From Callorhinchus milii (taxonomy: Eukaryota), in contig NW_024704745.1 in NCBI RefSeq assembly GCF_018977255.1, positions 46,438,001-46,502,000 on the forward strand: 64,000 nucleotides of DNA, given 5' to 3'. Under the pieces are notes generated by a model, which made no database searches, was not told where the DNA came from, and saw only the letters and a program-made list of their open reading frames with translations. Positions 9,096 through 55,989 of the stretch are shown here, piece after piece (position 1 is the first letter of the stretch; each line of letters begins with the position of its first letter). The translations under genes and the position numbers were made by a program.

Positions 9096-10989
9096 CTGCA
9101 ATCATTCCTCCAATGCAGCACTTGGATGGTAAACACCGACCTGAACACACAACTTTCTGATCCAGAGGTAGGTGTTACCAACTGCACCAAGCTGACATCT
9201 GGTAAAAGCATGAAACATGCAGATTATATATTAGTACATAAAGAATAACTTCAGTGATGAGCATCACTTTTAATGTAAGGTGCAAATGTATTTTTATATT
9301 GCTACAGTGGCCATTAACGTCCCAAGGCACTGTGGCATGGTTGCAACGATTATATACATAGTTCTGGATGTTTTGGAGCAAATATATGTCGGTGGTTCAA
9401 ATACCAACATCAGCCATGAGGGCATTGTTTCTGAATAGGTATTGTTAAACCCTAAAAGTTAAATCATAGCCTTATACTCATTGTCTTCCAATATTATTGT
9501 TAATGATGTTAAAAATAAAATTACATTATGGAGGACCGTGAGAGGGTAATGTGAAACAGAACAATAATGTTATGTGATTCACAGGAGGTACAATGGGATA
9601 AAGTTTTAAGTCTTGTGCTGTGCTCATTTAGGTAGGCTTAAATGACCGGTGACATAAATGGTTCTAATGTACCTTTCCTGGTCAGTGGAAAATTCCTCTT
9701 CAGACCAGATCACTGCTATCCTTAATACTCCTAAAGTGGATATTAGTACAATTATAAATTGTAGGCCTAGAGTGATGTGAAGTGCTTTGAGATGCTCTCC
9801 CAATGTGAAAAGCACTACATAAATTGTTGTACACACTATTGAAATGGTGTGAATTCAGACATTTCCAAAGCACTTACTATTAGGTCCATTCATTTGAATG
9901 CCAGATTTCCTATCTGTTGCTTGCTGTGAAGCTTTGGGTGTATTTTACTGTGTCATTAAACTGAATTCATGGAAGTATTGGTAAAGTTATTCCTTTCAAT
10001 AATCATTCATTGTTTAAATAAACCAAGGTACATTCAAACTGACACTTTGGTTCTGACAAAAGAAGAAATGTGGTGGTGGTGGGTGGAATTTGAAGACAAC
10101 ATCCATTCAAATGAACATATCTCAGTCTGTATAATGTAGAACTGGGAGGATGTTTTCTCCAGCAATCAAATTGCTGATAGATTCATTGATGCATGAAAAA
10201 AGTAAACCTGTATTCAACATAACAGTAATAATTAAATGAGGTTCGTAGTGCACTGATAATGCATGATTTTCTAGTAAGCATTTGTCCACACAATAAATGT
10301 CCATCAATTAGAACAACTTTGAATTCAATTGGTACATAACTGAGGATGCAGAGAGGAAGAGTTATAATAATATATAATAATAATCCTTGGATTTGATATG
10401 GCGCCTTATCACGTCTTCAAGATGTCTCAAAGTGCTTCACAGAATATACTGTAAAGTGTATATTTTGTGGGCGAAAAGCAGCAGCCAATTATGCACGGCA
10501 GTGTCCCACAAACAGTTATGGATTGGTGAATTCTGGACCTCAATCAATCAATGTCACACAAGGAAGCATCCAGGAGGTAGAACTTGAAAAGCATAATGAC
10601 AATGGACTTTGGAACATATTTGTGGTACCCTCATGAATTGAATTATGCAATAAAAAAAATGCAATGCTTCAAGAGTATCTTCTGAATGGCCTTTAACAGC
10701 ACTATGATGAGACAAATTGATTTTCTTCATCCTTTTCACTAAAGCGTTTAACTCTAGTAGAAATGCTGAGGGGAGTGCTAATTAGGAATCTTTGGTGAGA
10801 TCTCCTAACATTCTGTCCTTGTTTACTCACATTTACATTTTCACTAAAATTAGCTAGCACAGAAAACAAGTCAAGGTGACAACGCAGACATGAGAATGAA
10901 ATTGAAGCGTGCAATATATTGTGGTTTAAGTAGGGTACAGGGTGTCAGACACACCTTGACCAAAATGAGGCATTTGTGTAAGAATTAAC

Positions 10990-12755
10990 CGCTACTTCCC
11001 AGCTCTACTCTTTCCTCTCCCAGCACTCTCTGCTCTTCTCACAGCACAGAGACTGCCTGAGTCAAAGTCACAAATGACATTCTGTCCATCTGTGACCATG
11101 GCTCTCTCTGATTCCTCATCCTTCTTGATCTCTCTGCCGCCTGCGACATTGTTGACCAAGCTACTCTTCTTCATCATCTCTCCACTCAGCTTCGCTGTCA
11201 TGGTTTGGTCCTTGACTGGCTTCACTATCATCTTTCCCATCGTCTTCACTTTGTATCTGCCAATAACTTCTTCTCCAGCCCCCACACCTCCACATGCCCG
11301 CTCCTCAGGCCTCTATTCTTGGTCCACCCCTCTAAGTGCTCCGGGATGCTATGCTGCATGAAGGCCACTATATAAATGCAAGTTGTTGCTGTTAATATTT
11401 ATATGTTCCCACTCAGTAATGCCGTCCGCAGGCATTGGGTCAACTTCCACATGTATGCAGATGACACTAAACGCTTTCTCTCTGACTCCACCTTCGATTC
11501 CAGGTGCACTGCTCTCTTAACAGATTGCCTGTCAGACATCAAGTCCTGAATAAGAGCTATCTTTCTCCAGTTGAATATTGACAAGACGGAGGCTCTCCTG
11601 CTTGGCTCCTATCAGCAACTTCTGACTTCAGGCGCTCACAGCATCACTATAAATGGATGCACTCTCCACCTCACCGAGCCAGAATGGAACCTTGGTATCT
11701 TCTTCAACTCTCAAGTGTTCTTTAAACCCTACATTTATGCCTTGACCACTTTCCCCAATCTCAGCAACATTGCCTGTCTCCACCACTATTTCTTCGCTCA
11801 AGCACAGAGATCCTCAGCCATGTTTTTATCACGTCCAGGCTTGCCTATGCTAACTCTCTGCAATGCTCCCTTCCACAAGCTACAGACTATTCAGAACTCT
11901 GCAGCTCATGTCTTCTCCTACACCTGGCTCCGCCCGCCTATCACCCCCATCCTTGCCTGGCTCCACTGGCTTCCTATTCCCCAGAAGATTGAGTTTAAGA
12001 TCCCCATTCTCACTTTTCACAGTGTTAGTCTGCCTCAGTGGTAAGTACTCTTGCCTCTGAGTCAGAAGATTGTGCATTAAGCCCCATATTGGGTCTTGGA
12101 ATCACATAGGCCAATCTGACACTCAATGCAGTATGTTGCATTCCCGTGGATTTGTCCTTCAGATGAATATTAACCCGATATGCCGTCTGTCTTTTCAGGT
12201 GGTTAAACATTTTCTGGCATTATTCAAAAACAGAAGGGAGTTTCTCCTGGTGTCCTGGCCAACAAATCCCCTAATTAAAATTGGACACTCACTCCATGCA
12301 TGTTTGTGGTATATGACTGTGCGCAAATGGGCTATCTCATTTTGCCCACAAGAAAAGTTATCAGTTCACTTTGCAGTATATCCTGTTAAGTGCTTTAAGA
12401 CAGCTTGACAACGTGATAAGGCGAGGGTTATTATTATTATCTCTGTGACCTTCTTAAACCTTACCAACCCGCCCACTCCCTCCTCTGGGCAGGAACTGAC
12501 CTGCTTCCCGTGCCCTCGCCTTCCGCCCCACCCCCAGCAGCCCCATCGGCAGTCTTTCTCCCTCCACTCTCTGGAATTGCATCCAAAATTCCCTTCACCT
12601 CACCTCCTTTGACTCTGCCTTTGATCATCTTCCCACCCGCACCACCTTGGCCCCCACCCCTCTTGAAACCATTCCGTCAACTGTCCAGTACTTTGGGACA
12701 TCCTCCCGATGTGAAAGGTGCTATGTAAATGCAATTTGTAATTTGTTGTTATTGT
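10990..12755 (+). mobile_element. L2 LINE (RT to 3' end) interrupted by a ~60-bp L2-type tail (11334-11390) and a SINE (12028-12438)
   Basis: [27 protein letters not shown] and LHWLPIPQKIEFKI motifs are collinear across both insertions. Confidence 0.85.
12028..12438 (+). mobile_element. Older long Deu-domain tRNA-SINE (SacSINE1-like)
   Basis: Head cttgcctctgagtcagaag, core gtgtcctggcc...ctgtgcgcaaatggg, (TTA)n tail. The family name is from memory. Confidence 0.7.
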
Positions 12756-14504
12756 ATTCAATATTCAAACAGCAGGTTTTAATATTGAACTCATCACTTG
12801 TCAGAATTTGAAAATACCTGTTTAAAATGTGTAAACTTTATGCAGCACACATTCTTCAAAAGGGTACAAATTTTAGGATAGTTTTATTTTTTACACTAGC
12901 ATAATTGGGGAATGAATGCACAAATCAAGCTAATCCTATCTCCCTGCATATCAATTATACTAGTCAGCATATTGCATTCATCCCTGTATAAACTGTTACC
13001 CAGGAAACCGGTCAGGCCACAGACCAGCAGGGATGCATTACTGCAGTCTGTCTAACCTGCTCACCTACAAGAACAATAGCCTAACAGTACATAATTGAAG
13101 TAGAAATAATGGGATGAAATTTTCAACATTACCACAAAAATGATAATTGCTCCGAGGAATACTTTATGAAACAATGCATTTTGAATAATTATGCCCTGCT
13201 CCACTCACACGCTATCTTTCCCATCAGATCCCCACTCCATATTGATTCCAGTTGCCATGAGTGCTATCTTGATTTTGGGTCCATCGAGGCTTAGTCCCAT
13301 CTGCCATCCTGCAGGCAGATTTTGAGTCAAGGAGAAGAGGGAACTATCTTAATAGCAATTGGCCTCCTGTTCTGTTCTACTTAAAAATTGAAGGTTTGTT
13401 CAGCATGGATTCCCTCAAGCTTGAAATTTCACTTCAAAATTTTTAAAATTGCTTTAACACAATGTATTGATCACCTCTAAAAAGTAAAGAATTAATAATT
13501 TAATGTGGCTTTGAAGTTCTGTTTGATCTTAAGCACAGTTGGCTGCTTTACATTTTATAATGAAGTGGACGCCACACATATTTGTATAAGCATACGTGTG
13601 CTTGTGCATTCTTTCTATTTTCGCCCCATATTGCTTTGACATTCTTGTACTGAGATGAGTATACACCCCTGTTTACATAAGATAGTTTTACTTTAACATC
13701 TTATTCTATTTTTACTTACTTAATCATTTTAATATGTTCTCTTAATGGTGTCAATCATAATATTGTCAATTGTATATAAAACACACACTTACCACTCACG
13801 TTAAGTATGAAAAGAACAGATGTATGAAAAGAACAGATGTATGCTGAATTAATTGACAACACCTACAGAATGTATTTTAGTTTGTATGGGTGGGGGGTGT
13901 ATGTGGTATATATATATATATATTCCAGTAACACAAAAGAATGATTCTGCAGACAAATGTATTACAAAATATTATATCCTCCTGTTCTCACTACATCTGC
14001 TGACGCCTACACACTCACCCACGCTCTCACCCTAATTTACACCTCTTAGGTGGAACTTTCTTCAAGTTTGAAGTACAACTGTTCAGAAATGTTAGCATTT
14101 TAGGTTTTCATTCTTTTCATATAATCTTAAATTGTTAATACATTGAAATTGTATTTCAAAAGTGGCTTATATTGAAGATACAATCTGAAGGCATATATTT
14201 GAAAAATTTTAAGGGGTTAATTCAATCTTCAAAATGGTTGAACTAGATATAACTTGACTGAGACGAGAAATAGATTTGATAGTAATCTTTAGTTATACCA
14301 AATGCAAGGATTATTATTATTATTATTAGTTGTTCAGTTTTTTTTTCCTCTTTCAAATTTTGCTGAATATGACTTAGAATATGACTATATTGTGAATAAA
14401 CCTTTGCAGTGCTATCATGAGATCAATACATCTGTGCAGAAGAAGAAATTCTGCAGGATATCTTTGGATCAGGAGAATATTAATCTGAAAAATGATATAG
14501 AGCT

Positions 14505-15800
14505 AGAGTCACAAGCACAGTGGCGAAATTTGCAGATGAAGGTGGTAGACTGCAAAGATGAACAGGATAGGTTACAGGAGGACTTGAACATTCTTGGGAA
14601 TTGGGCAGATCAATGGAGATGAAATTTAATGTAGAGAAATGCAAAGTGCTTCACATGGTGACACAAAATCCAGGAAGAGACTAATAATTAAATGGTAAGA
14701 AAATAATCTGTATGGAAAATGAAAAGGATCCAGAGATCCTGATTGATAATAAATTGAAGCTTTTGCAACAGTGCTCGGTAGCAGTGAATAAGGCAAACCA
14801 GATGCTGGGCAATATTGAGCCAAAATAGTGGGGTAGTTCTGCATAAATCACTGGTCCAACCACACTTGGAATATTGTGTGCAATTCTGGTCACTGCAATA
14901 TAAATAGGATACAGTCCTGCAGCTTAATGGTGAGAGCACTCACCTCACAAACGAGACGACCTGATTCCGGGCAGGACAAAATGTTGGGCAAGTTTCCTTA
15001 CTCCACACGCCTAGCAATAAGCAGGAACCCAGTTGTTAGGCGACTGGCAGATTGCTTTTTCGGGGGCAGTAATCCCTTCAATAAAAATATATCATTTTTT
15101 AAAAATAATAATAACAATTATTATAAAAAACACTCAATCTTTGACTGTTTGTGGGACACAGCTGTGCGCAATTGGCTGCCGCATTTCGGCCACAAAATAC
15201 GCAGTCAATTCATTCCACAATTTATATTTATAACGCTTTATATTCTGTAAAGCGTTTTGAGATGTTTCAAAGATGTGATAAGGCGCAATTTCAAAATGCA
15301 AGGATTATTATTATTATACAGAGGTGAGCAACCAAAATAATTGAGGGGATGGAGCGTGTGGACAATGTGGAGCAGTTAGATAATGTTCACACAGGAGAAA
15401 AGAAGGTTGAGGGGTGTTATGATTATGGTCTTTAAGATTCTGAAGGGAATAGATAATGTAAATCCTAATAAGCTGTTTTATCTTGTACTGAACAGTAGAA
15501 TCAGAGGACACGGCCTGCGATTGAATGGGGGTAAATTGAGAACAAATCTGCAGAAATACTACTTCAGTGAGCGAGTAGTAAACTTCTGAAATAGGCTCCT
15601 TAGGAAGACAGTGGAAGCAGAAAATCTTGTTTGTTTCAAGAACAAATTAGATAGATGTCTGCTAGAAAATAATATCTCAGGATACAGTATATAGTTTGGG
15701 CCACGGTGTGTCAAGCAACTGCAACAATGGTGGTAGGCGAACTAGATGGACCTTGGTATTCGTTCACCTGGCAAATTCTTATTTGCTTATGTTCTTATAT
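14505..15800 (+). mobile_element. CR1 LINE 3' portion interrupted by a SINE
   Basis: RLQEDLNILGNWADQW and EKRRLRGVMIMVFKILKG...RGHGLRL...FSERVVN, followed by a CR1 3' UTR. Confidence 0.9.
14913..15315 (+). mobile_element. tRNA-derived SINE, long-module subfamily, inserted in CR1
   Basis: tRNA-like head, gggcaagtttccttactccacac, Deu-like core, L2-type tail with (TTA)n; ATACAG at both junctions. Confidence 0.85.
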
Positions 15801-17834
15801 GGCATTGCAAGAGTTTAGATTAAATTCCAGCCACAGAGCAAACCACTTTTTCCTACTTTACCTTTGCCAACTACCAAGCCAGTTACTTAGCAACTGCCAG
15901 CTATGTAATGAAAGGTCATACACTGTTGCATTGACAAGAAAGTGAGGAAGTCGCTAAGCCGTCATTATGTAATTATTTAACATCAACTGGAGGCCTTGCT
16001 GGAGCAACAATGTCTACACCACGAACAAACAAAACCCTCCTACATTTTACATTTGATTAAAAGCCAGCTCCTTTAAAGCCAATGAAATTAAACTTCCGAT
16101 AACATTTATTTTTCAACAGTTCCACCACTTGCAGGCCAAGAGGCACCCAGCACTGCAAGCTGATCCATCTTTTTTGACATCCTTCACTCAAATTGCCCAT
16201 GACTGCATGCAATTCAAAATGTTGGAATTGTCGCATTGCTTTGGAATGTTTGTAGGAATGTCCGCTTTGTGGAGGACAGTTAGTTGAACATTTTAATTTC
16301 AAGTTTAGCAGGCTCTCTCACTCAAAAAATAAGCTCTCAGAGCCACAACTTTTTTATGCTCCTTTTCATGAAGTACGGTTCACACGGAACTCAGCTCCAC
16401 GTAGAACACACCACGCAAAGATAATCTGCAGGCTGCACTCAGTGCTAAATATAACTGTACCATAATTTTGAACCACTGATCAGAAAGCTTCTTAAGGTCC
16501 CCCCTCTCCCCCCCCCACACACATACCCCCATCATACCCCACATCAGGAACACTTTTTGCTTATTGTATGCATATGCTTATTTCTTTGCTTTTTTTAAGT
16601 GCTCAAGAAGCCTTTCTAATAAATATATAGCTTTTTGGGAGCTATGGGATGTGCTCTTACTCCAATGGACATTCTCACCACTTGGTAAGATTGCATACTA
16701 TCAAACTGATGAAGATCACATATGATTAACATGGATATCTTGGTAGTTCTGAAGCAAAAGTTCCAAGCCTGGTTCACTTGGGAGGAGCATTCCAGTATTA
16801 CACCTATAAACTCTAAGGTTTTTATTGTTTACCACATTTCACTCAACATGATAATATTTGTGGTATTCCTTTCTTAATCAACACAAGGAATGATCTGGTT
16901 AAGAAATTCTGCAACTTTCTGTTTCTTAATTAGTCCCACCCTTGCTATTGTGTATATATGAAAGAACATAATTTACATTACAATGCTGTGTATCCACATG
17001 CTTACTCTGCATGACAACTTATCCACATCGGAATGCAAAATTAGAGGGAGTGAAAGAAGGGCTGACACAATATGGTACAGTTCTATAGTGACAGCATAGC
17101 TGATGGAATGATGTTTTAGTGAGCTATGACAATTGTTTTTGTGCTATGACCAATAATCGGCACTGTTTCCACATCTTCAATGGGCCCAATTAGTCCATAT
17201 AGCCAGATCTCCACTGCAAGTGACAAATTGTTTCTGACAAATTATTTCCTGAGGTGTAACTCCAAATACTCTCCTCTTTTGCTCATCACCGGTTACCAAA
17301 GTCATTTTCTGCAATGCACAACTGGAGCACCATTTTCATGTGCTGTTTTCAAATTAACAGCTTGCTTAAGCAATTTGAAGCACCACTATTTTTTTTATTA
17401 CTATTACTCCCCCATTGGCTCAAATTTCAGTGTTAGGTTTAACACTTACAAAGTTCCAATTAACACTGAGTGAAATAACAGACATAACATGGTTGGCGCT
17501 ATGAAAAGCACAAGTTATACATACAATACACTTAGTACAAGCATTTGATGTGCAGCAAAATCTCACCCTGAGATCTATCTATTACAACTCAAGCACACCC
17601 TTCAAAAAAACCTGCGTTGTCTTCAAATTTGTGAAATTGGTTTCAAGCGTTTGTCAGAAATCATACCAAGGATATTATTAAGACATTTTATTAGCAAATT
17701 AAAACAACACAAGCATAAGCATCACATTACACCCAACGCATTATCATTACTTGTCGTTCTTAAATGACTACTAAAGCACTATCTTAACAAGATACACTCA
17801 ATGCTAAAATTCTAAACATATATTTAAAAAATGA

Positions 17835-26836: not shown

Positions 26837-26909
26837 ATGGAGTCTTTGAAGGAAAGACTGTGGACAACTTTGCTCTTAACAACCATTCGCATTACTCTTC
26901 TACTCCCAG
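26837..26909 (+). CDS. CD200R1: CD200R-like exon 1, signal peptide MESLKERLWTTLLLTTIRITLLLP(G)
   Basis: ATG in gaaATGg context, hydrophobic core, strong donor CAG|GTAAGT, phase 1 joining exon 2 to give LLLPGVLA-TE (plausible cleavage site). Confidence 0.75.
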
Positions 26910-32900: not shown

Positions 32901-35900
32901 CTCACCCCCTACTTTGCCTCCTGCTTCTCCCCCTGCCCTCCCCTCTCCCCCACCCCAACCCTCAGCTCGGGTCCATAACTCTGTCTGTCCAGCACTTTGG
33001 GACTTCGTCCCGACGTGAAAGGTGCTATACAAATGTAATTTTGTTGTTGTTGTTGTTATTGTTGCTGTTGTTATACACCATTATAGAAGGGCTGGAGTTA
33101 GGAATAATAAAAAAAACTTAATATTCTCAATGTGGGAAGTATAGGGGAAGGAGTATCATTTTCCCCATTCCTGTTATGGAATGGGGGAGCGGTGGGGGGT
33201 GCTTAAAAAAGCAGTTTAATGTAGAATTATGACAAAGCTGGTGAGGGTTGAGAAGGGCTGGGAGTGAGGGTGATTTGATAGTTGACGTTGGAATGCTGAA
33301 GGTTTTTCACCAATGGCAGATTGAACAAGGGTGCTGTACTGTGCTAAGCTGAGCTGAGCTGCTGACCACAAGGGTGAGAATCCAGACACAGTCAACATCA
33401 CTCCACAAAATTCAGTGATTGAAGAGTTTGTCTAATCATTCCTCACAGCTCATTCCTCTAACACTTTTGTTGCTTGTTGCTCCCCTCTGCACAATCTTTG
33501 GGGCCTGGAATGCCCCCTTATGTCATGGTGAGGAGAACTGTATTCTGTACTCTAAACTTGGTCTGACCAGAGCATTTGGCCTGAGTGTGAGTATGAATTT
33601 AAGTAATTTAAGATAATTAATACATTTTCTATTTTTTTTCTAGGTGTTCTAGCTACGGAAAATGGAAATTCTACTGAATATATACAAACACTGGGTGGCA
33701 AAGTCACCTTGAATTGTTCAGAATCTTACCTAAGTGCAACTTTTATTCATTGGGAGCAAACAGATACAATTGGAGTGAAAGAATACAAGTCTATAATAAG
33801 TCATGATTGCTTATCAAATAGAATCCAAACATATAATAATACCAGAGTAACAACTCCAAATACAACTTGTAATGCACCAAGTAAAGATTTTTATCTTCAG
33901 ATTGAGTCTGTAGACGTGACTGATGAAGGGGAATACAAATGTGACATTGCAACTCGAAAGGGAAATTTTCAAAAAATCTTTTCATTAACAGTCATAGGTA
34001 AGACTACTTGTACTTGAATCTTCTCGTTACCCAGAGAGTTTGATCTGTTGTGGGGTAGACACACTGATATTGTAGTTTAAATAATTTATAGTAAGTATAT
34101 GAAACCTGGGGTTGGGGGGATTTGAGATGTATAGACATGACATTGCTATATTTTGCAACGGACTGGTGTAAATGCATATCAGATTGTGGGATATTTATCA
34201 GGGCTGGATATTCACTAGGCTGGAGTGGACTGGATAGATGTGTCCAAGGTGAGGATTATCAATTATCGAACCTAAAATAAAATGGTGGAATGTTAGTTAA
34301 TAATTATTGACTTGTTTCGGACATCGCTCTGGATGACACAATGGTTTGCTGTGTCTGGGGTATTGCATTTTCTGGGCTACATATTTATCGGATCAGAGGC
34401 AGCACCCGAATGCTGATTTACAGGATACAGGCTAAATGGATCGTGTTTTTAATGATAAATCAGCCATTCTCCACAATCAGAAGAAGTTAGATTTTTGGAT
34501 AACCGGCTTCGGCTTTAATAATTATTAATTCTTAATAGTTTAAGAAAACTCATGTTTTGGTATGAATGTTTTTCTGTTATTTTTTAGTACCACCCAATAT
34601 CTCAATAAGTTGTGAAAACAATTCAAATGGAACGAAAACAGCAGTGTGCACCGCGTCAAATGGGAAACCAAAGGGAAACATCACATGGCAGCCAACCAAT
34701 GAGGAAAATATCATCAGTACTGTAGAGAACAGTAATAGTACTGTGACTGTACAAAGTAAGTACATCATAACGGATACCAGCAACTACAAGGGACACCTGA
34801 CCTGCATCGTGACACATCCAGCACTGAAGGAGAGACTAAACTATGTATTTCCACTCTGTAAGTATATCTACAATAAATATTACATTACTGATGTATGTTG
34901 CTGATGCTTTTATTGAATCACGACACAACAAAATCAAAACTGGTGAGGTTTTCAGAAATTATTGAGTTTGTTGATCTTTTGTTTTTGATCTGCTTTTAGG
35001 AATAGGGCAGAGCTGAATGCAAATACAATTTGTAACATATTAGATAAAATAAACCCTGGAGACTCCACACACTGCAAAAACACCAGTGTTTATGGCTTGC
35101 AATCCAGTGAGGAAGATCGTAGCCTCTAAATTTATATTGCAGGCTCCAACAGCCAAGCACTGTGACCAATTCTAAGTGATTAGTGGTGCATGTTATAACA
35201 GCTATTTGTGGAAAATAATTGTACAATAATACAAAATTATAGTACATTGCTCACCCTGACTCAGCACCTCTGGCTCTCCATCACCAGTGGATAGACTTCA
35301 AGATCCTTGGCCTCACATTCACCTCCTACCACAGTCTTGCCCCACTCCATCTCTGTGGTCTCCTGCAAGAGAGGAGGATGTCATTACTAATATTAGCTAA
35401 TTAAATCTACACTTTTCACCTTCTACTCAAAGTGAGTTTATGCCCCCATGTTTTAGCTTTTGTGACAATGCAGAAGATATCAATAGGGTTAAGTTTAGGG
35501 AACACTTGTGTAAATCCAATATTATCTGCTTTAGTTTACAATGGTATTTCTGTTTCATTAAAATTTCCTTTATTACTTTTGATAAAGAAATGAGTACATT
35601 TCACTTTTGTATTTTTATACACTTTATATTTCACTTTTACTGTTAAAAGTACAGATTATGGTGAGCATAAACAAAAGCAGCAGTGATGCATAGAAACATA
35701 GCTGTAGTTATTTCAATAATAAAAGCATGTCTATATCTTTATAAAGAAATCTCTCATGCAATAAAATATCTGATTGGTGCCCGTCTTTTATAGATTGCAG
35801 TCCATCTCCAGGCAGTTCATCACCAAATATTACTATTGCCCTGTGTAGCGTGTGTCTTCTCTGCTTTGCACTAACACTAGCCAAGTGCTTCTTCCACAAA

Positions 35901-38388
35901 CAACTCAGGTGAGATTAACAAATTAGAAATAAAAATTGTGTTCTGTAATGCTGTAGCATTGCTATTACCAAACCATTTAAAATTCCACCCTGTTGATAAT
36001 TAAAGACATCGAGTGGCCCATGGATGTGATCCCACTGACTTTGAAATTCAGATATTTCAGGGATATTAAGTTACAATGTGTGGTGTAATTTAACCAGCTA
36101 GCCCTGGCATGAAATCTCCTGATTTGCTTCACTAAAGAGTGTGTTGTTCCCACATAAAGGTTGCATACAAAGGTTGGGAGTAGAGCTGAAGTTATCTTGG
36201 GAGATTGCACTGATTAGGATGCTAGAGTGATGGACAGAAGTATTACTACAGACAGCAGAATTGCAGGAACATTGAACAGTAATGTAATAATATGATATAA
36301 TAATAATCCTTGGATTTGGTGTAGCGTATTTTATGTCGGGAGGACATCCCAAGATCTTCACATGATATATTGTGATATTGTACCGTAATATACAAAATGT
36401 GTTTTGTGAGCAATGTTTTGCCCTGTCTAATGATTAGGAAGAATGAGCGATAAGTGGGAGTCACATGTGTTACCCCAGTTACACATGATAAGACCATCCC
36501 ATTCATCTTATTTATGATGCCCAAACAGATCAGGGTACAAGGCTGACTTCAGTTTACAGGAAGGCATTTTGTAAAATGTAAATATGAGACAGTAATCAGA
36601 AGAGGGGAGAAAACAGATATGATTAGAGGTTAGGATTAGAGGTGAATAAAAAGTTTAGAAGATTCATTAAATTATAAAAATAAGGCTTTAGATCAATCAG
36701 TTTTTAAAAATGCTCATGTTTTTCCCTGATGCCTGATAAATACTGTAAATATATGGCTAATAGTATCAACTTTCATGTAAAGTTTACTGTTTGCATTTCA
36801 GATTTAAAATTTGTGGTTTGTGTAATGCTTTCACACATTATATAAATATCTACCACAAGGGATGTGAGTTTCTTGGTCTTTGGGGGAAAGGAAATAAAAC
36901 ATAGTTAGAGATCAAAAAACAAACATCTTCCTCTTTAATTTGCATTTTTATTTTGCTTACAGAAACAATAATTCCTCATGTTCCTGTCAGGTACGTCATC
37001 TATAAAATATTTGAGTTGTTGTAGTCTGCCTTTCTCAGCTGCTTGACCTTATGGTTTATACTCATATGGGGAGAAATTCTATCTTGGTCTAGGTTTTTAT
37101 CGAACAATTCAAAACATCTATAATTTGGTGAATTGTTGACTTTAGTCTTAACTTTGAGCCTTTTTCTGTACTTCCCCAAGCCTGAAACCTCACCCATTCC
37201 GCAATTTGACTACCAAGACTACCAAGACTGAAAGTCAGGTCTGAAGATGAAATGGCTAAAATAATTTAATGAATTGTTTTTCAATTTTTTTTGATCTATC
37301 CTTAACGATTTTCCTTCAGTCACAATTTTTTTTGATCTATCCTTAACGATTTTCCTTCAGTCACAATTAACCATGATCACATGAAAAATTATGGAACCTG
37401 GAAAACTCACTAATATAATTAATCAGCAAAGAATGTGCGTATTTATGTTATAACATAGGCAGATGAAATCTCTGAGTTTTTGGTATTCAAATACAATTTG
37501 GACGATTTTAAGAAATAAGCCAAGAACAACAGCAACAAGATTACATTTGTATAGGGCCTTTCACATCGGGAGGAATAGAAAGAAGGAATAGAAAGAGGCC
37601 ATTAGGCCACTGAAGTCTGTCCTACAACTTTATAAGATATGGCAGTTCTTTTAATGGTCTTTGGTTGCCTAACTTGATGTAATCTGAAAATTTAAAAATC
37701 TTCCAATGTGTCTGCAAATCCAGATCAATAATGTATACATGGAACAGAAGATCTCCCAGTACAGATCTCTGAGACACCACTCTTAATAACGTAACCACAA
37801 TTTGACTGAACTGGTCTAATGACTTCCCTTCACTTCCTTCAGCCAATTTTGAATCCATGTCCATACCTCACCCTTGAAACCCAGTGACATTGGTTTGTAT
37901 AAGATTCTCAGATACTTGTCAAACATCTTTTGTAAGTCTAGGTATACTATGTATATGGATTCCCACATCAAAACAAATCTATGTGGTTGATTAGACAAGA
38001 TCTTATGAAGCCGCGCTGGCTCTTATTTATTAGGTTATCATTATAATTCATTCCATTAGCTTTACAATCATTGAGGTCAGGCTAATGGCTCTGTGGTTGT
38101 CAGGTATGGCTCTGTCACCGTTCTTAAGGGTAGCACATTTTCTCGATGGGGATAAAGCAATAGTTATAGCAAAAGCAATGCTCTGAGACATCCTCCCAAC
38201 AGTGAAAGGTGCTATATATTGAAAATGTAAACTCTTTTTGCATTGCTTGGACTTCAAAATGAACCCCCTGATCTATGTTTATCTTACAGAAAGAGACCAA
38301 ATCGGATGAATCCGTCACATATCTAGAGAACATCGTCTATGATTCACTGCAACTGTACAAGCCAAACTGTACAAGAAGAGAACTCTGA
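26837..38388 (+). CDS. CD200R1: CD200 receptor-like type I Ig-superfamily receptor, 6 coding exons, 312 aa: join(26837..26909,33644..33997,34588..34857,35794..35908,36963..36990,38290..38388)
   Basis: All introns are GT-AG with compatible phases (1,1,1,2,0); the 939 nt are open from ATG to TGA. Architecture SP-IgV-IgC2-TM-Tyr tail. C2 motifs TAVCTASNGKPKGNITWQP, NSTVTVQS and LTCIVTH and the V-end GNFQKIFSLTV resemble mammalian CD200R1 (from memory). About 10 N-glycosylation sequons. The symbol means family-level similarity, not proven orthology. Confidence 0.85.
27430..27790 (+). mobile_element. Older Deu-SINE in intron 1
   Basis: gggtttgagttccac head, ctcctgatgtcctggc core, degenerate tail. 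Confidence 0.6.
29240..29462 (+). mobile_element. 5'-truncated young SINE
   Basis: Matches the 3' two-thirds of 19902-20229. Confidence 0.85.
30927..31247 (+). mobile_element. Young TGC-loop SINE, full length
   Basis: Perfect anticodon-like stem CTCGC-TTTGCAA-GCGAG; nearly identical to 19902-20229. Confidence 0.92.
31430..31700 (-). mobile_element. CR1 3' end
   Basis: Reverse complement ...gggccgaatggctcc...tgctgcaaaattctatggttcgatgg is a CR1 3' UTR type. Confidence 0.6.
32750..33075 (+). mobile_element. Short L2 3' fragment with (TTG)n tail
   Basis: Matches the last ~300 bp of the other L2 copies. Confidence 0.85.
33644..33997 (+). CDS. CD200R1: CD200R-like exon 2, IgV domain
   Basis: Acceptor ttttttttctag|, donor G|GTAAGA, 354 nt, phase 1/1. 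VTLNC, IHW, LQIESVDVTDEGEYKC give the canonical V-set Cys-Trp-Cys and DxGxYxC. Confidence 0.95.
34588..34857 (+). CDS. CD200R1: CD200R-like exon 3, IgC2 domain
   Basis: Acceptor ttattttttag|, donor T|GTAAGT, 270 nt, phase 1/1. PPNISISC, AVCTASNGKPKGNITW, LTCIVTHP. Confidence 0.95.
35794..35908 (+). CDS. CD200R1: CD200R-like exon 4, stalk plus transmembrane segment (Y)CSPSPGSSSPNITIALCSVCLLCFALTLAKCFFHKQL(R)
   Basis: Acceptor cgtcttttatag|, donor CAG|GTGAGA, phase 1 in and 2 out, hydrophobic stretch followed by basic residues. Confidence 0.88.
36963..36990 (+). CDS. CD200R1: CD200R-like exon 5, 28-nt cytoplasmic micro-exon (R)NNNSSCSCQ
   Basis: Acceptor ttttgcttacag|, donor CAG|GTACGT. Phase 2 in and 0 out exactly bridges exons 4 and 6. 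Confidence 0.75.
37282..37368. repeat. Perfect 41-bp tandem duplication in intron 5
   Basis: caattttttttgatctatccttaacgattttccttcagtca occurs twice consecutively. Confidence 0.9.
37580..38150 (-). mobile_element. Degraded CR1 RT fragment in intron 5
   Basis: NHRAISLTSMIVKLME, VYLDLQKMFDK, WIQNWL, QRSVLGDLLF, KFSDYIKLG. Confidence 0.85.
38290..38388 (+). CDS. CD200R1: CD200R-like exon 6, terminal coding exon KETKSDESVTYLENIVYDSLQLYKPNCTRREL*
   Basis: Acceptor tgtttatcttacag|, phase 0, three tyrosines, stop TGA 38386-38388, AATAAA at 38470-38475. Confidence 0.82.
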   Translation, partial: KETKSDESVTYLENIVYDSLQLYKPNCTRREL

Positions 38389-41300
38389 ATGGTTACTGGA
38401 GAAGTAGTGTTCTGTTAAATTATGGCTAATGAAGTGTTAATTATCACCTGGAGTACTTATCATATTGGCAATAAATTTAGCCAATGTGATCAGTTGGTGT
38501 TTGGGGTCTGTCTGGACCACTCTCCCTCCTCCTCCTACCACCACCACCCCCCCACCCCCCCCCCCCCCCCCCCACCCCACTTACAATGAGCAGTGGACTG
38601 TCAGTTCACAAAATACTGCCGTAACTTTGATTTTTGTTGTTGGGATAAGGCAGTATCCTGCAGACCTGCACTCAGTCCAGTGGCCTCCAATTACACGTTT
38701 GGACAGAGTCGGAGTCACAGCCATAGGAAATCCTTCAACTCGGTATTGACTAATTGCCTTTATCAATGATACGATAATAATTAGCACCAAAGTTAATTAA
38801 CACATCACTAGGCACAATTGTCTATTCTGCTGTAAAGTGTTTGACTGGCAAGTTGCTGTGTGCTTCAACAGGAATTTTTTACTAGACAATTCATCCATAG
38901 AAAAGCTGTTGGAGTGGAAGACAAGCAGACATTGCTTGTGAGAGCATGTGTGTGGGTTGGAGTGGGGTGGTGAGTGGTTGTTAGGAATAGGAATAACTCG
39001 GGGGCTTCAGGGAAATAGAAGATTATGGGTTGTCAGAGAGACAAGCTGACACAAGCTGACGTTAGCTCACCCTCCAGATTACTTTCACTCCATATAAGTT
39101 TATAACGTCATCACTAATATAGCGGAGATCAGATCACTGTGATCGCTGCTAAGTAAGGGGAACTGCAGAAGCAAACACATATTCTACTCTTCTTTGTCAC
39201 TTTACATTTGATTACTAATACATTGCATCAATACACTGGCTCTTTTCAATTGATACCTGGTCAAGTATCAATCACTCAGCTTTTCATTCACTGTATAAGA
39301 CAAGTCATACGTGCCTCAGAGGCAGTACTTCATTTTATATATACTGGAGAAGAGAAATAGAAGAGCTACACAGAATTGAATAAGAGGTTTTGTAAGATTG
39401 CAACAATGAAAAGTAGTTAAATTTAATTCAAAAGTACAACTCAAATTATAAAAGCATGTTAACTCTGACAAATTATTATATTTGATTGATGTAAATCGAC
39501 CTGTTCATTATAAAATACGCATAATGCAATGCTTAATGATTGTTAGCGGGCTTGTGTAAGTTGAAGGAGGGCTGAAAATATAAACTGATTTGAAAGATTT
39601 ATTTGCTTGCACCAAAAGAGAGAAAATGCATTTGAATGTATAGCAGCTAAATTAAGAAGAAACTTTATTTTGCTCTGCCTACAACTTATTAATGATAATA
39701 ATTTTATAAAGATATACGTACAGGGATAGTTTAACAGCTGTTTTTTGTTTTTCTGTATCCATTCAGTACAAGAAGTGTTGATTTCCCTCTTATACAGGTT
39801 TATACAGAATAAAAAATTGTGTTTCATGGGATAATTATCACCAGTTATATGTATTTATCGTAAGAATGGACAATCAGTTGTTTTGTTTCCGCAACAATCT
39901 GTCCTTAAAGATGAGCTTGGGACTGCCTCCCCATCTCCCCCCACAACATCTCCAGAAATGATTTGCTGCCACCCTGGATTTTAATATAGTGATGGAATCC
40001 TCTCTTTGATTCCTAGTCTCTATGCCTGTTTTTAACTTAATTGTTTTACTTTTGAAATTACTTTAGATCATCATTACAAAGTGAGAACTTCACATTCTCT
40101 GGGACTCAATGCAAGATCTTCCAATCAGTGTTATATAAAGTATAAGTTGGCACCAAAGACAAAAGCATTCTCCCTCCAGACATTTAGAGAGGAGTGTGGG
40201 GGGCATTAATCAGACCCATGAAATAGCCAATTTTAATAACCAAACTGGAAAAAAATCTTTTTTCTCAGCATCAATATTTTTAGCACCTAAGATTGTTTGA
40301 TGCAATGGTCACTGAAAATTTGGTGCTGATAGCACATGTTTTCTCACGTTATTTCCACTGAATGTCATGTACATTTGTTTCTGAGCCAGCCCTTTGCAGT
40401 GTGGGTTTATTATCGCACAGAGGCGATTCACACCCTAAAGTGCTTAAGTCAGTATAAATTATTTTCATGATCAGCTAGGATAATATATGGTTAAGTAGCA
40501 GAAACCAGACATCCACTACAGTACCGGAAACCACATTTGACATTTTGCCTTCACTGTGTGGCACAATACACTGGACAAAGGTGTCAGTTGTTAACCAGCT
40601 GCCCACTCTTTCCCCGAAGCAAAGATTATGCCAGTCAGCCTCAGACCTAGCCCACCTGATAGATAAAAAGGTTGGGGAGAATGTGAATGTAGTAACAAAG
40701 CTAAGGGTCACCCTTAGAAACAAAGGCCCCTTGTGTTAATATTGATCGTATAATATGGAGGCGATATGCTAAGGGAATAGTAAAGTTTGTGGTATTTGAT
40801 AATTAACACTGATGTAAATTAATGGCAGAGTTAACGATCACCACACTTGTGATGACCGCACCACATGACACTCCGGGACGCTATCCTGCGTGAGGGGCGC
40901 TACATAAATGCAAGTTGTTGTTGTGATGTTTAGTGAGAAAGTAAATGCTGAACTGTATTCACATTCAGTATTTCATCAAGTGACCACCAGGTGACAGCAC
41001 CTTCTTTTATTTTGATGTACATTTTTGCTTTTAAATTCTAGCCCTAGAATGTCTTCTTTTGTTTAATAGTTAAACACCTTGTTAAACAATTAAACATGTT
41101 AAGAAGTTGTTAAACAACCATCTGGATCCGCTAAAGAGGGTGAAACTGGACTCTCTCCAGCCCAGGGTTTTCTTCCTGATATGGACTGAAGCCTTGTGTC
41201 CCACCTGAAGCCTGAGATCATGATCAGGGAATTAAACACTGGGCAGGGAAGAGCACCCATTTCTCCCTTCTTCAACATATCCCACCCAGAAAACACCTAA

Positions 41301-55264: not shown

Positions 55265-55438
55265 TTAGTTGGTTATCACTTCTTCATATTCCTGACGGTC
55301 TTCTTCTGGAATGGTGTCTTGCTTGTCATTGTATGAAATGACTGCATATTCACATGCCATATCATTGTTTGGCTTTACTTCTTCAGAACCACCCATATTG
55401 GTGTGGTCTATCGTGGCATAGAAAATTTCTTCATTATT
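55265..55438 (-). CDS. Terminal coding exon of an ITIM/ITSM-like inhibitory receptor (BTLA-like tail): NNEEIFYATIDHTNMGGSEEVKPNNDMACEYAVISYNDKQDTIPEEDRQEYEEVITN*
   Basis: Minus-strand acceptor ttaatttctacttacag|, phase 0, 57 open codons. IFYATI fits the ITIM consensus, CEYAVI is ITSM-like, and the two tyrosines are 24 aa apart. Confidence 0.8.
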   Translation of the reverse strand, partial: NNEEIFYATIDHTNMGGSEEVKPNNDMACEYAVISYNDKQDTIPEEDRQEYEEVITN

Positions 55439-55989
55439 CTGTAAGTAGAAATTAAGATAATGAGAAATGAATACTGAATTTAATAGAGTTTCACCATAGC
55501 ATGACATCAGTAGATAAACTGAATGTGCATTTCAGGAATCAGTCATCACTGTTATTTGATTTCCACTGAACATGATTTTTCTACAATTAAGGCAATCTCA
55601 TTGATACTGACTCTCACAATCCATTGCAAATACAACATTGTTTGCTAACATTTTCTACTACGTAGCCAACAGATAATACTGATCCCCACTAGACTTAGTG
55701 TTAAGCACACACATAACCTTGCCCAAGGTTTTATTCAAACACCTTATATGTCTTTATCTCTCAATACCTGAAATAGATTTTACTGTGAGGCAAATCATTT
55801 TAATTCTTTTTATTTACCTCTAGATCTTATTATTTCCCACAATACATCGCTTTTTGTGTCACTTTGCAAAATAGGTTGGGGTGAGTGGCTCAAGAAAGAA
55901 CCCAAGTGCCATGAAAGTGATTCTATTTCTTTAAAGGTGGCAGCAGATGCTGCAGATTTCTTCACTCCTCTATGTACTGCTACACATTT

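What the first reader, a model, noticed from the sequence alone, without database searches (positions are those of the whole stretch)
38290..38388. Hybrid signalling motif NIVYDSL: NxxY and ITIM on one tyrosine
Mammalian CD200R1 signals through an NPLY PTB-binding motif (Dok2-RasGAP) and lacks a classical ITIM. Here the positionally similar tyrosine sits in E-N-I-V-Y-D-S-L: the proline is absent, NxxY is kept, and IVYDSL fits the ITIM consensus (I/V/L/S)xYxx(L/V/I). An acidic patch (SDES) and an upstream Tyr precede it. Inference: an ancestral or dual-mode receptor able to recruit SHP/SHIP phosphatases as well as, or instead of, Dok adaptors.
Basis: partly seen in the sequence, partly recalled or inferred. 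Interest (0 to 1): 0.7.

Follow-up and report, generated by a model that had tools for sequence, protein, structure and literature searches.

The report
Elephant-shark CD200 receptor tail exon
This is the real, transcribed last coding exon of the elephant shark's CD200-receptor gene; its key tyrosine keeps the family's conserved NxxY docking site and also fits the loose ITIM pattern, an overlap already described for bird CD200 receptors and of unproven function.

Summary
Window 38290-38388 (+) encodes KETKSDESVTYLENIVYDSLQLYKPNCTRREL-stop. RNA contigs splice it, through a 28-nt micro-exon, to the transmembrane (TM) exon of an IgV + IgC2 + TM gene. The spliced product is identical to RefSeq XP_007901225.1, "CD200 receptor 2", Callorhinchus milii.

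In a tail alignment the N and Y of NIVY are the only invariant columns with NPLY of human and mouse CD200R1. So this is the homologous docking tyrosine.

Ten elasmobranch relatives share [ML]-E-N-x-[IV]-Y-[DE]-[ST]-[LF]-Q. The strict ITIM pattern is met in 6 of 11 cartilaginous-fish species. Position -2 varies (I, L, F, S) and +3 is L or F.

The idea is not new. Timmerman et al. 2021 (PMC8007030) showed that the proline is mammal-specific. They also showed that bird CD200R (KENVIYNSV) carries an ITIM overlapping NxxY, which they judged probably non-functional. They sampled no cartilaginous fish.

Most likely mechanism: a phosphotyrosine docking site for Dok-type PTB adaptors. An acidic +1 residue, the lack of a second ITIM/ITSM and the variable -2 residue argue against a classical SHP-recruiting ITIM. 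The conserved +1 to +4 residues still suggest a second reader, either an SH2 domain or AP-2 (YxxPhi).

Verdict: a new member of a known kind, of modest interest. The scan had already noted this gene on this same window (s1-139698).

The parts
26837..26909 (+). Leader exon: ATG and signal peptide MESLKERLWTTLLLTTIRITLLLP, then one base of the next codon (phase 1), donor GTAAGT
   Evidence: Sequence read. Matches the N-terminus of RefSeq XP_007901225.1 (P0188).
33644..33997 (+). IgV exon
   Evidence: Pfam V-set, E 1.3e-10. RNA joint 33997 to 34588, GT..AG, in three runs.
34588..34857 (+). IgC2 exon
   Evidence: Pfam C2-set_2, E 2.9e-10. RNA joints on both sides.
35794..35908 (+). Stalk, transmembrane and juxtamembrane exon (…NITIALCSVCLLCFALTLAKCFFHKQL, ending two bases into a codon)
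   Evidence: Hydrophobic stretch. Splice sites. RNA joints 34857 to 35794 and 35908 to 36963.
36963..36990 (+). 28-nt cytoplasmic micro-exon (R-NNNSSCSCQ) that puts the last exon in frame
   Evidence: RNA contigs X1 record 2, X2 record 10 and X3 record 14 carry it. GT..AG on both sides.
38290..38388 (+). Last coding exon: KETKSDESVTYLENIVYDSLQLYKPNCTRREL and stop TGA at 38386-38388
   Evidence: RNA joint 36990 to 38290 in X1 and X2 with 0 other letters. Identical to the C-terminus of P0188.
38326..38349 (+). Motif E-N-I-V-Y-D-S-L (NxxY overlapping the ITIM pattern); Tyr codon at 38338-38340
   Evidence: N and Y are invariant with human and mouse NPLY in alignment A3. Conserved as [ML]ENx[IV]Y[DE][ST][LF]Q in 10 elasmobranchs.
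38389..38505 (+). 3' untranslated region with AATAAA at 38470-38475. Both spliced RNA contigs end at 38505.
   Evidence: The poly(A) site is inferred, not shown.

Best explanation
The stretch is the terminal coding exon of the Callorhinchus milii CD200R-family receptor gene. The gene has a leader, IgV, IgC2, TM, a 28-nt micro-exon and this exon. The exon supplies most of a 46-residue cytoplasmic tail.

The central tyrosine (LENIVYDSLQ) is the homologue of Tyr297 (mouse numbering) in the NPLY motif of mammalian CD200R1. The most likely mechanism, by inference, runs as follows. On ligand engagement a Src-family kinase phosphorylates this tyrosine. The hydrophobic-E-N-x-x-pY segment is then bound by the PTB domain of a Dok-type adaptor. 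That adaptor brings in negative regulators, which in mammals are RasGAP and Csk.

The fit to the ITIM pattern comes from a variable hydrophobic residue at -2 and a conserved Leu/Phe at +3. It is probably not a classical SHP-1/SHP-2 site. The conserved Y-[DE]-[ST]-[LF]-Q half does suggest that something also reads the C-terminal side of the tyrosine.

Shown: exon use, reading frame, family membership, positional homology and conservation. Inferred: phosphorylation, and the identity of the bound PTB or SH2 proteins.
For: Splicing and frame: (joints 35908 to 36963 and 36990 to 38290 in single contigs).

Identity to RefSeq XP_007901225.1.

Family:
- V-set plus C2-set_2 domains.
- PDB hits to CD200R4 and CD200R1 at E 2e-16.
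- A profile built from the two cartilaginous-fish proteins P0188 and P0190 found, outside cartilaginous fish, only proteins named CD200R plus one 177-aa bird fragment named 'MOR1A protein'.
- The nearest Atlas clusters are CD200R1.

Homology of the tyrosine: N and Y are the only invariant columns between shark and ray tails and human and mouse tails (A3).

Conservation: [ML]ENx[IV]Y[DE][ST][LF]Q in 11 species.

Literature:
- N294 and Y297 are conserved across vertebrate classes, while P295 is conserved only in mammals. NxxY can still bind Dok2, as in VEGFR3 (PMC8007030).
- Dok1 binds phosphorylated NxxY in integrin beta tails (PMC4479986 abstract).
- Dok1/2 and Csk are the required effectors of mouse CD200R1 (PMC12134331).
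Against: There are no binding or phosphorylation data for any cartilaginous-fish CD200R.

The tail lacks two residues that human CD200R needs for full signalling: P285 (Val here) and K292 (Leu here, with spacing two residues shorter). It keeps only one of the two upstream tyrosines.

PTB domains mainly read residues N-terminal to the tyrosine, so the strong conservation of +1 to +4 is not explained by Dok binding alone.

Mouse CD200R1 phosphopeptides also pulled down SHP-1, SHP-2 and SHIP-1, so phosphatase recruitment cannot be excluded.
Confidence: 0.55

Rival explanations
1. The same phosphotyrosine is a working ITIM that directly recruits the SH2 domains of SHP-1, SHP-2 or SHIP, as well as or instead of Dok adaptors. 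This would be the ancestral state of CD200R.
For: IVYDSL fits the consensus. So do IIYETL, LIYETL and LIYDTL in Heptranchias, two stingrays and two Mobula species. Birds have VIYNSV. A hydrophobic +3 residue in cartilaginous fish and birds suggests an old feature. SHP2 N-SH2 hallmarks include -2 Ile/Leu/Val and a hydrophobic +3 (PMC10369915). Mouse CD200R1 phosphopeptides recover SHP-1, SHP-2 and SHIP-1 from lysates.
Against: Five of 11 species break the consensus: Phe or Ser at -2 combined with Phe at +3, or Phe at -2 alone. The conserved acidic +1 residue is not among the +1 residues that SHP2 N-SH2 favours, which are Leu, Ile, Phe, His, Asn, Ala and Thr. There is only one such motif and no ITSM partner for tandem SH2 domains. 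The authors who described the bird overlap thought it not functional. In mouse macrophages SHP-1/2 and SHIP-1 were dispensable for CD200R1 function. The ITIM pattern fits 5.7% of all tyrosines.
Confidence: 0.2
2. The conserved Y-[DE]-[ST]-[LF] half is a YxxPhi sorting signal. The AP-2 mu2 subunit would read it when the tyrosine is unphosphorylated, controlling surface level and internalisation of the receptor. This is the arrangement known for CTLA-4. It could sit alongside NxxY docking.
For: Every cartilaginous-fish tail has Leu or Phe at +3. YxxPhi accepts both, whereas the ITIM pattern does not accept Phe. NPxY-type motifs are best known for trafficking (PMC8007030 abstract). The YxxPhi and CTLA-4 parts rest on established knowledge and were not tested here.
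Against: Teleost (YNSS) and most mammalian (YDTT) CD200R tails lack a hydrophobic +3 residue, so this is not a family-wide feature. No trafficking data exist. Conservation of Gln at +4 and Asp/Glu at +1 is not required by YxxPhi.
Confidence: 0.15
3. The motif match has no function. The exon would be a mis-annotated or unused open frame, or the tail would be drifting.
For: The open frame is only 32 codons. The ITIM pattern is common by chance. The Callorhinchus branch is long in the tree (1.08).
Against: Spliced RNA contigs from two independent runs carry the exon in frame with no mismatch. The motif core is conserved across sharks, rays and a chimaera, and N and Y are conserved through to mammals.
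Confidence: 0.03

Closest known systems
Mammalian CD200R1 (human Q8TD46-type, mouse NP_067300), tail EEDEMQPYASYTEK(N/S)NPLYDT(T/V)
   Same: IgV + IgC2 + TM architecture. An acidic patch and tyrosines lie upstream of an N-x-x-Y-D-[ST] core. N and Y are invariant in the tail alignment.
   Different: There is no proline at -2 (Ile). The -5 residue is Leu, not Lys. Spacing between the upstream Tyr and NxxY is two residues shorter. P285 is absent, and only one of Y286/Y289 is kept. There is an extra Tyr six residues downstream (LQLYKPN). Leu at +3 makes the ITIM pattern fit.
Bird CD200R1, tail PYTTYVQKENVIYNSVSDL (Timmerman et al. 2021, S2 File, PMC8007030)
   Same: E-N-hydrophobic-hydrophobic-Y-x-S-aliphatic, that is NxxY overlapping a consensus ITIM. 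This is the closest published precedent for the hybrid motif.
   Different: Birds keep P285, both upstream tyrosines and K292. Their +1 residue is Asn rather than Asp, and +3 is Val rather than Leu.
Elasmobranch CD200R 1-B-like / 2-like proteins (e.g. XP_043556713.1 Chiloscyllium, XP_059822167.1 Hypanus, XP_067848418.1 Heptranchias)
   Same: Nearest relatives by path length in the tree. They share the tail frame RN..S.S.Q…ENx[IV]Y[DE][ST][LF]Q..KP.
   Different: Only 32-43% identical to the window protein over BLASTP local alignments covering 39-97% of it; 36% over the full alignment with Chiloscyllium. Elasmobranchs have GPFIQM where Callorhinchus has ESVTYL, so they lack the upstream tyrosine. 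In the tree, Callorhinchus, this clade and a second elasmobranch clade form an unresolved three-way split.
Classical ITIM receptors (KIR, LAIR-1, SIRP-alpha, FcgammaRIIB and the like)
   Same: The pattern (I/V/L/S)xYxx(L/V/I) is met.
   Different: There is a single motif, an acidic +1 residue, and an Asn at -3 that makes it a PTB-type site. No SH2-phosphatase binding has been shown. That typical ITIMs have Ala, Ser, Thr or Val at +1 is established knowledge, not tested here.

Membership tests
CD200 receptor family | Ectodomain of one V-set and one C2-set Ig domain, a single TM, type I topology | tested here: met
   Pfam V-set E 1.3e-10 and C2-set_2 E 2.9e-10. One hydrophobic segment. Signal-peptide-like leader.
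CD200 receptor family | Closest sequence relatives are CD200R proteins rather than CD200, nectins or B7 | tested here: met
   A profile of the two cartilaginous-fish proteins P0188 and P0190 found, outside cartilaginous fish, only proteins named CD200R (birds, one frog) plus one 177-aa bird fragment named 'MOR1A protein'. The nearest Atlas clusters are CD200R1. In the PDB, CD200R4 and CD200R1 (63 bits) tie with nectin-3 (64 bits), so the ectodomain alone is not decisive.
CD200 receptor family | Binds CD200 | not testable with these tools
CD200 receptor family | Genomic neighbourhood with BTLA and CD200, as on human 3q13 | tested here: inconclusive
A PDB sequence search of that frame found nothing. 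The human gene order is from memory.
CD200R1 extended signalling motif EEDExxPYxxYxxKxNxxY (Timmerman 2021) | N294 and Y297 (NxxY core) | tested here: met
   N and Y are invariant in A3.
CD200R1 extended signalling motif EEDExxPYxxYxxKxNxxY (Timmerman 2021) | Acidic stretch E/D278-282 | tested here: inconclusive
   S-D-E-S has two acidic residues out of four, in the aligned position.
CD200R1 extended signalling motif EEDExxPYxxYxxKxNxxY (Timmerman 2021) | P285, both Y286 and Y289, K/R292, and 8-residue spacing from Y289 to Y297 | tested here: not met
   V-T-Y-L-E-N-I-V-Y has no Pro, one upstream Tyr, Leu in place of Lys/Arg, and 6-residue spacing.
NPxY motif | Pro at -2 of the tyrosine | tested here: not met
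   Ile at -2. The wider NxxY class is met.
ITIM | Sequence pattern (I/V/L/S)xYxx(L/V/I) | tested here: met
   I-V-Y-D-S-L.
ITIM | The pattern is conserved in orthologues | tested here: inconclusive
   Met in 6 of 11 cartilaginous-fish species. Position -2 is I, L, F or S and +3 is L or F.
ITIM | Phosphorylation-dependent recruitment of SHP-1, SHP-2 or SHIP | not testable with these tools
The +1 Asp is outside the reported SHP2 N-SH2 preferences.

The most novel reading that the evidence does not exclude
The ancestral jawed-vertebrate CD200R carried a bifunctional docking tyrosine of the form hydrophobic-E-N-hydrophobic-hydrophobic-pY-[DEN]-[ST]-hydrophobic. A PTB adaptor (Dok) read its N-terminal side and an SH2 effector (SHP, SHIP or another) read its C-terminal side. 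Cartilaginous fish and birds keep this state. Mammals became PTB-only by gaining Pro at -2 and mostly losing the hydrophobic +3 residue. Teleosts lost the hydrophobic +3 residue.
Probability: 0.2. Interest if true: 0.55.

Novelty: new member of a known kind. Interest (0 to 1): 0.3.

Why it matters
CD200R1 is a myeloid checkpoint under study as a drug target, and it is the textbook case of an inhibitory receptor without an ITIM. The elephant-shark and elasmobranch tails push the record of its docking tyrosine back to the base of jawed vertebrates.

They show that the constant part is E-N-x-x-Y-[DE]-[ST], not NPxY. They also show that a hydrophobic +3 residue, which creates the ITIM-like look, is old rather than a bird peculiarity.

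This gives a cheap, direct test of whether CD200R was once a phosphatase-recruiting receptor: bind the shark, bird and mouse phosphopeptides to Dok PTB and SHP/SHIP SH2 domains. On present evidence, though, this extends a published observation and is not a new mechanism.

Tried and rejected
1. Direct splice from the TM exon to the last exon. Rejected: it shifts the frame and stops after 12 codons. RNA shows the 28-nt micro-exon instead.

2. An exhaustive phmmer search with the IgV exon alone. It returned mostly generic multi-Ig proteins. It was useful only for picking up the gene's own fragments and a few CD200R-like proteins.

3. Word-indexed search with the 210-aa fragment P0001. It found only three Ensembl fragments from the same gene. 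The full RefSeq protein was hidden as a cluster member and was recovered by the listing of cluster members.

4. A charged-TM, DAP12-type activating receptor, suggested by the RefSeq name "receptor 2" and the Lys in LAKCFF. Rejected: the Lys sits at the cytosolic end of the hydrophobic run, elasmobranch relatives have Arg at the aligned place (TVRCF), and the tail is long and tyrosine-rich.

5. Further CD200R paralogues in the window. tblastn found only this gene.

6. Rfam scan of 33000-39500: no matches. The very deep RNA signal at 37520-37575 is a repeat.

7. A PDB sequence search of the neighbouring BTLA-like tail frame: no matches.

8. I tried to confirm the RET Tyr1062 sequence as a non-proline Dok PTB ligand from the literature. 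The motif letters were not found, so I do not rely on it.

9. Other SH2 readings of pY-D-S-L (Src-family, Nck or Csk type). Considered from memory only and left as an open possibility.
Full report
**1. What is in the sequence**

Window 38290-38388 follows a polypyrimidine tract and an AG at 38288-38289. It reads KETKSDESVTYLENIVYDSLQLYKPNCTRREL, then TGA. The motif ENIVYDSL is at 38326-38349 and its tyrosine codon at 38338-38340.

**2. The gene around it**

Upstream on the same strand lie four exons:
- An IgV exon at 33644-33997 (Pfam V-set, E 1.3e-10).
- An IgC2 exon at 34588-34857 (C2-set_2, E 2.9e-10).
- A stalk and transmembrane exon at 35794-35908.
- A leader exon at 26837-26909 encoding MESLKERLWTTLLLTTIRITLLLP.

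The TM exon ends two bases into a codon. A direct splice to 38290 would therefore read the last exon out of frame and stop after 12 codons.

Laying RNA-run contigs on 33200-39100 resolved this. GT..AG joints link 33997 to 34588, 34857 to 35794, 35908 to 36963 and 36990 to 38290. A 28-nt micro-exon at 36963-36990, encoding (R)NNNSSCSCQ, restores the frame. Single contigs in two runs (X1 record 2, X2 record 10) carry TM exon, micro-exon and last exon with no mismatch. A third run (X3 record 14) carries IgV, IgC2, TM and the start of the micro-exon. Both spliced contigs end at 38505, about 30 nt after an AATAAA at 38470-38475.

**3. Identity**

The spliced product has 312 residues. It is letter for letter RefSeq XP_007901225.1, [quoted passage not shown]. 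Three Ensembl/UniProt fragments of the same gene also exist. The window is therefore elephant-shark DNA, and the gene is already annotated.

Family evidence:
- PDB sequence hits to mouse CD200R4 and CD200R1 at E about 2e-16. These tie with nectin-3.
- A profile built from only the two cartilaginous-fish proteins P0188 and P0190 found, outside cartilaginous fish, only proteins named CD200R (birds and one frog) plus one 177-aa bird fragment named "MOR1A protein".
- The nearest ESM-Atlas clusters, by features and by structure, are CD200R1, followed by CD200.
- tblastn found no second CD200R-like gene in the window.

In a maximum-likelihood tree of 34 proteins, the cartilaginous-fish sequences form one group against tetrapods (99/97). 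Inside that group the Callorhinchus protein, an elasmobranch clade B and a long-branched elasmobranch clade A form an unresolved three-way split. By path length the window protein is nearest clade B.

**4. Is the tyrosine the CD200R tyrosine?**

A MAFFT alignment of nine tails (A3) has exactly two invariant columns. They are the N and the Y of NIVY (shark), Nx[IV]Y (elasmobranchs) and NPLY (human, mouse). The upstream VTY aligns with the ASY tyrosine (Y289 in mouse numbering) and SDES aligns with the end of EEDEMQ.

Measured against the extended mammalian motif EEDExxPYxxYxxKxNxxY (PMC8007030), the shark tail compares as follows:
- It keeps N and Y, a weak acidic patch and one upstream tyrosine.
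- It lacks P285 and K/R292.
- It is two residues shorter between the upstream Tyr and NxxY.
- It has an extra Tyr six residues downstream.

**5. Conservation**

Ten elasmobranch relatives with complete tails give the following:

| Species | Motif |
|---|---|
| Callorhinchus | LENIVYDSLQ |
| Heptranchias | MENIIYETLQ |
| Hypanus, Hemitrygon | MENLIYETLQ |
| two Mobula species | MENLIYDTLQ |
| Narcine | MENFIYETLQ |
| Chiloscyllium, Stegostoma, Rhincodon | MENFIYDSFQ |
| Scyliorhinus | MENSIYDSFQ |

The constant part is [ML]-E-N-x-[IV]-Y-[DE]-[ST]-[LF]-Q. The strict ITIM pattern holds in 6 of 11 species. Position -2 is the most variable (I, L, F, S) and +3 is Leu or Phe.

That gives about a 16% chance for a tail with three tyrosines to carry one.

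**6. What was already known**

Timmerman et al. [quoted passage not shown] Their findings:
- N294 and Y297 are conserved across the classes they sampled, while P295 is conserved only in mammals.
- Elsewhere P295 is most often Val, Ser or Thr.
- In birds (PYTTYVQKENVIYNSV) this change, together with Val300, creates a consensus ITIM overlapping NxxY.

Their supplementary table overlays the ITIM pattern on the alignment. They speculated that the bird ITIM is not functional, and noted that NxxY (as in VEGFR3) can still bind Dok2. They sampled no cartilaginous fish. Full-text searches found no paper that mentions CD200R together with "Chondrichthyes", and only three incidental co-mentions of CD200R and sharks.

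Tang et al. 2025 (PMC12134331) found that mouse CD200R1 phosphopeptides recover Dok-1, Dok-2, Shc, RasGAP, SHIP-1, SHP-1, SHP-2 and Csk. Only loss of Dok-1/2 or Csk abolished CD200R1 function in macrophages.

**7. Mechanism**

*Best reading (0.55).* The tyrosine is a phospho-dependent PTB docking site of the NxxY class, with a hydrophobic residue at -5 and Asn at -3. It would recruit Dok-type adaptors as in mammals. Dok1 binding to phosphorylated non-proline NxxY motifs is documented for integrin beta tails (PMC4479986 abstract).

*Classical ITIM reading (0.2).* It is weakened by four points:
- The -2 residue is variable.
- Phe occurs at +3 in four species.
- There is no second ITIM or ITSM.
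- The conserved acidic +1 residue does not match reported SHP2 N-SH2 preferences. Those hallmarks are -2 Ile/Leu/Val, a hydrophobic +3 and +5 Phe/His. At +1 it favours Leu, Ile, Phe, His and Asn, or Ala and Thr (PMC10369915).

PTB domains read mainly the N-terminal side of the tyrosine. The tight conservation of +1 to +4 (Y-[DE]-[ST]-[LF]-Q) therefore points to a second reader.

*YxxPhi reading (0.15).* A YxxPhi signal for AP-2 accepts both Leu and Phe at +3, and it could coexist with PTB docking. Another SH2 domain is also possible.

No reading has functional data in any cartilaginous fish.

**8. Ancestral state**

A hydrophobic +3 residue occurs in all 11 cartilaginous fish, in birds and in rodents (YDTV). 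It is absent in teleosts (YNSS) and most mammals (YDTT). Glu at -4 is shared by cartilaginous fish and birds. An ITIM-like ancestral sequence is therefore plausible.

**9. Verdict**

This is a new member of a known kind: an annotated CD200R orthologue whose NxxY/ITIM overlap has a published precedent in birds. The new information is the extension to cartilaginous fish and the motif [ML]ENx[IV]Y[DE][ST][LF]Q. Interest is modest (0.3). The scan had already noted the whole gene on this same window (s1-139698).

Noticed in passing
window 55268-55531, minus strand: An 88-codon open frame ends in a tail with IFYATI (fits the ITIM pattern) and CEYAVISY, followed by an acidic run. If that is right, the CD200R-BTLA neighbourhood of human 3q13 (gene order from memory) would be old. 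A PDB sequence search of the frame found nothing.
   Followed up: partly
window 37520-37575 (intron between micro-exon and last exon): RNA contig depth reaches about 10,000-17,000, and many contigs run on into unlike sequence. The letters (…caacaagattacatttgtatagggcctttcacatcggga…) translate to the TKLHLYSAFHVGR-type frame seen many times in the window. This is an abundant interspersed repeat carried in many transcripts, not part of this gene. There was no Rfam match.
   Followed up: partly
window 33791-33987 (3' half of the IgV exon) and 36155-36351: RNA depth is far above the rest of the gene: 86-187 at the first stretch and 238-285 at the second. A 255-nt loose end starts at 33949 in two runs, and there are odd joints 33453/33465/35319 to 36297. 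This suggests that other transcripts or repeats share these pieces. It is unexplained.
   Followed up: no
P0061, P0073, P0081, P0082, P0084, P0085, P0093, P0095, P0096, P0099 (elasmobranch clade A): A second, long-branched elasmobranch CD200R-like clade, variously named nectin-3-like or CD200R 1-B/2/5-like, has a different tail with a single [ED]-x-I-Y-Q-N-[VMT] tyrosine and no NxxY. It resembles the first half of the tail of the bird 'CD200R 1-B-like' proteins (SE-I-I-YQNYNPNIIY). Whether Callorhinchus has a member of this clade was not determined.
   Followed up: partly
P0212, P0191, P0215, P0195, P0193 (shark clade B proteins), juxtamembrane: Several sharks have a membrane-edge tyrosine in [LV]-[RG]-Y-[FL]-x-L (LRYFDL, VRYFNL, LRYFIL, VGYLNL). 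This also fits the ITIM pattern, about 35 residues before the NxxY tyrosine. Callorhinchus (LAKCFFHK) and rays (VIYFKHL) do not fit.
   Followed up: no
window 38500-38590: A long C-rich run, with a C homopolymer of about 25 bases, starts about 110 nt after the stop codon. The read-laying tool skipped it as a repeat.
   Followed up: no
P0002 and P0071 (UniProt A0A4W3H575, A0A4W3H580): Ensembl-derived isoform models of this gene read through into introns or use exons near 35405-35590. No RNA contig covered 35367-35760 in the four runs laid.
   Followed up: partly
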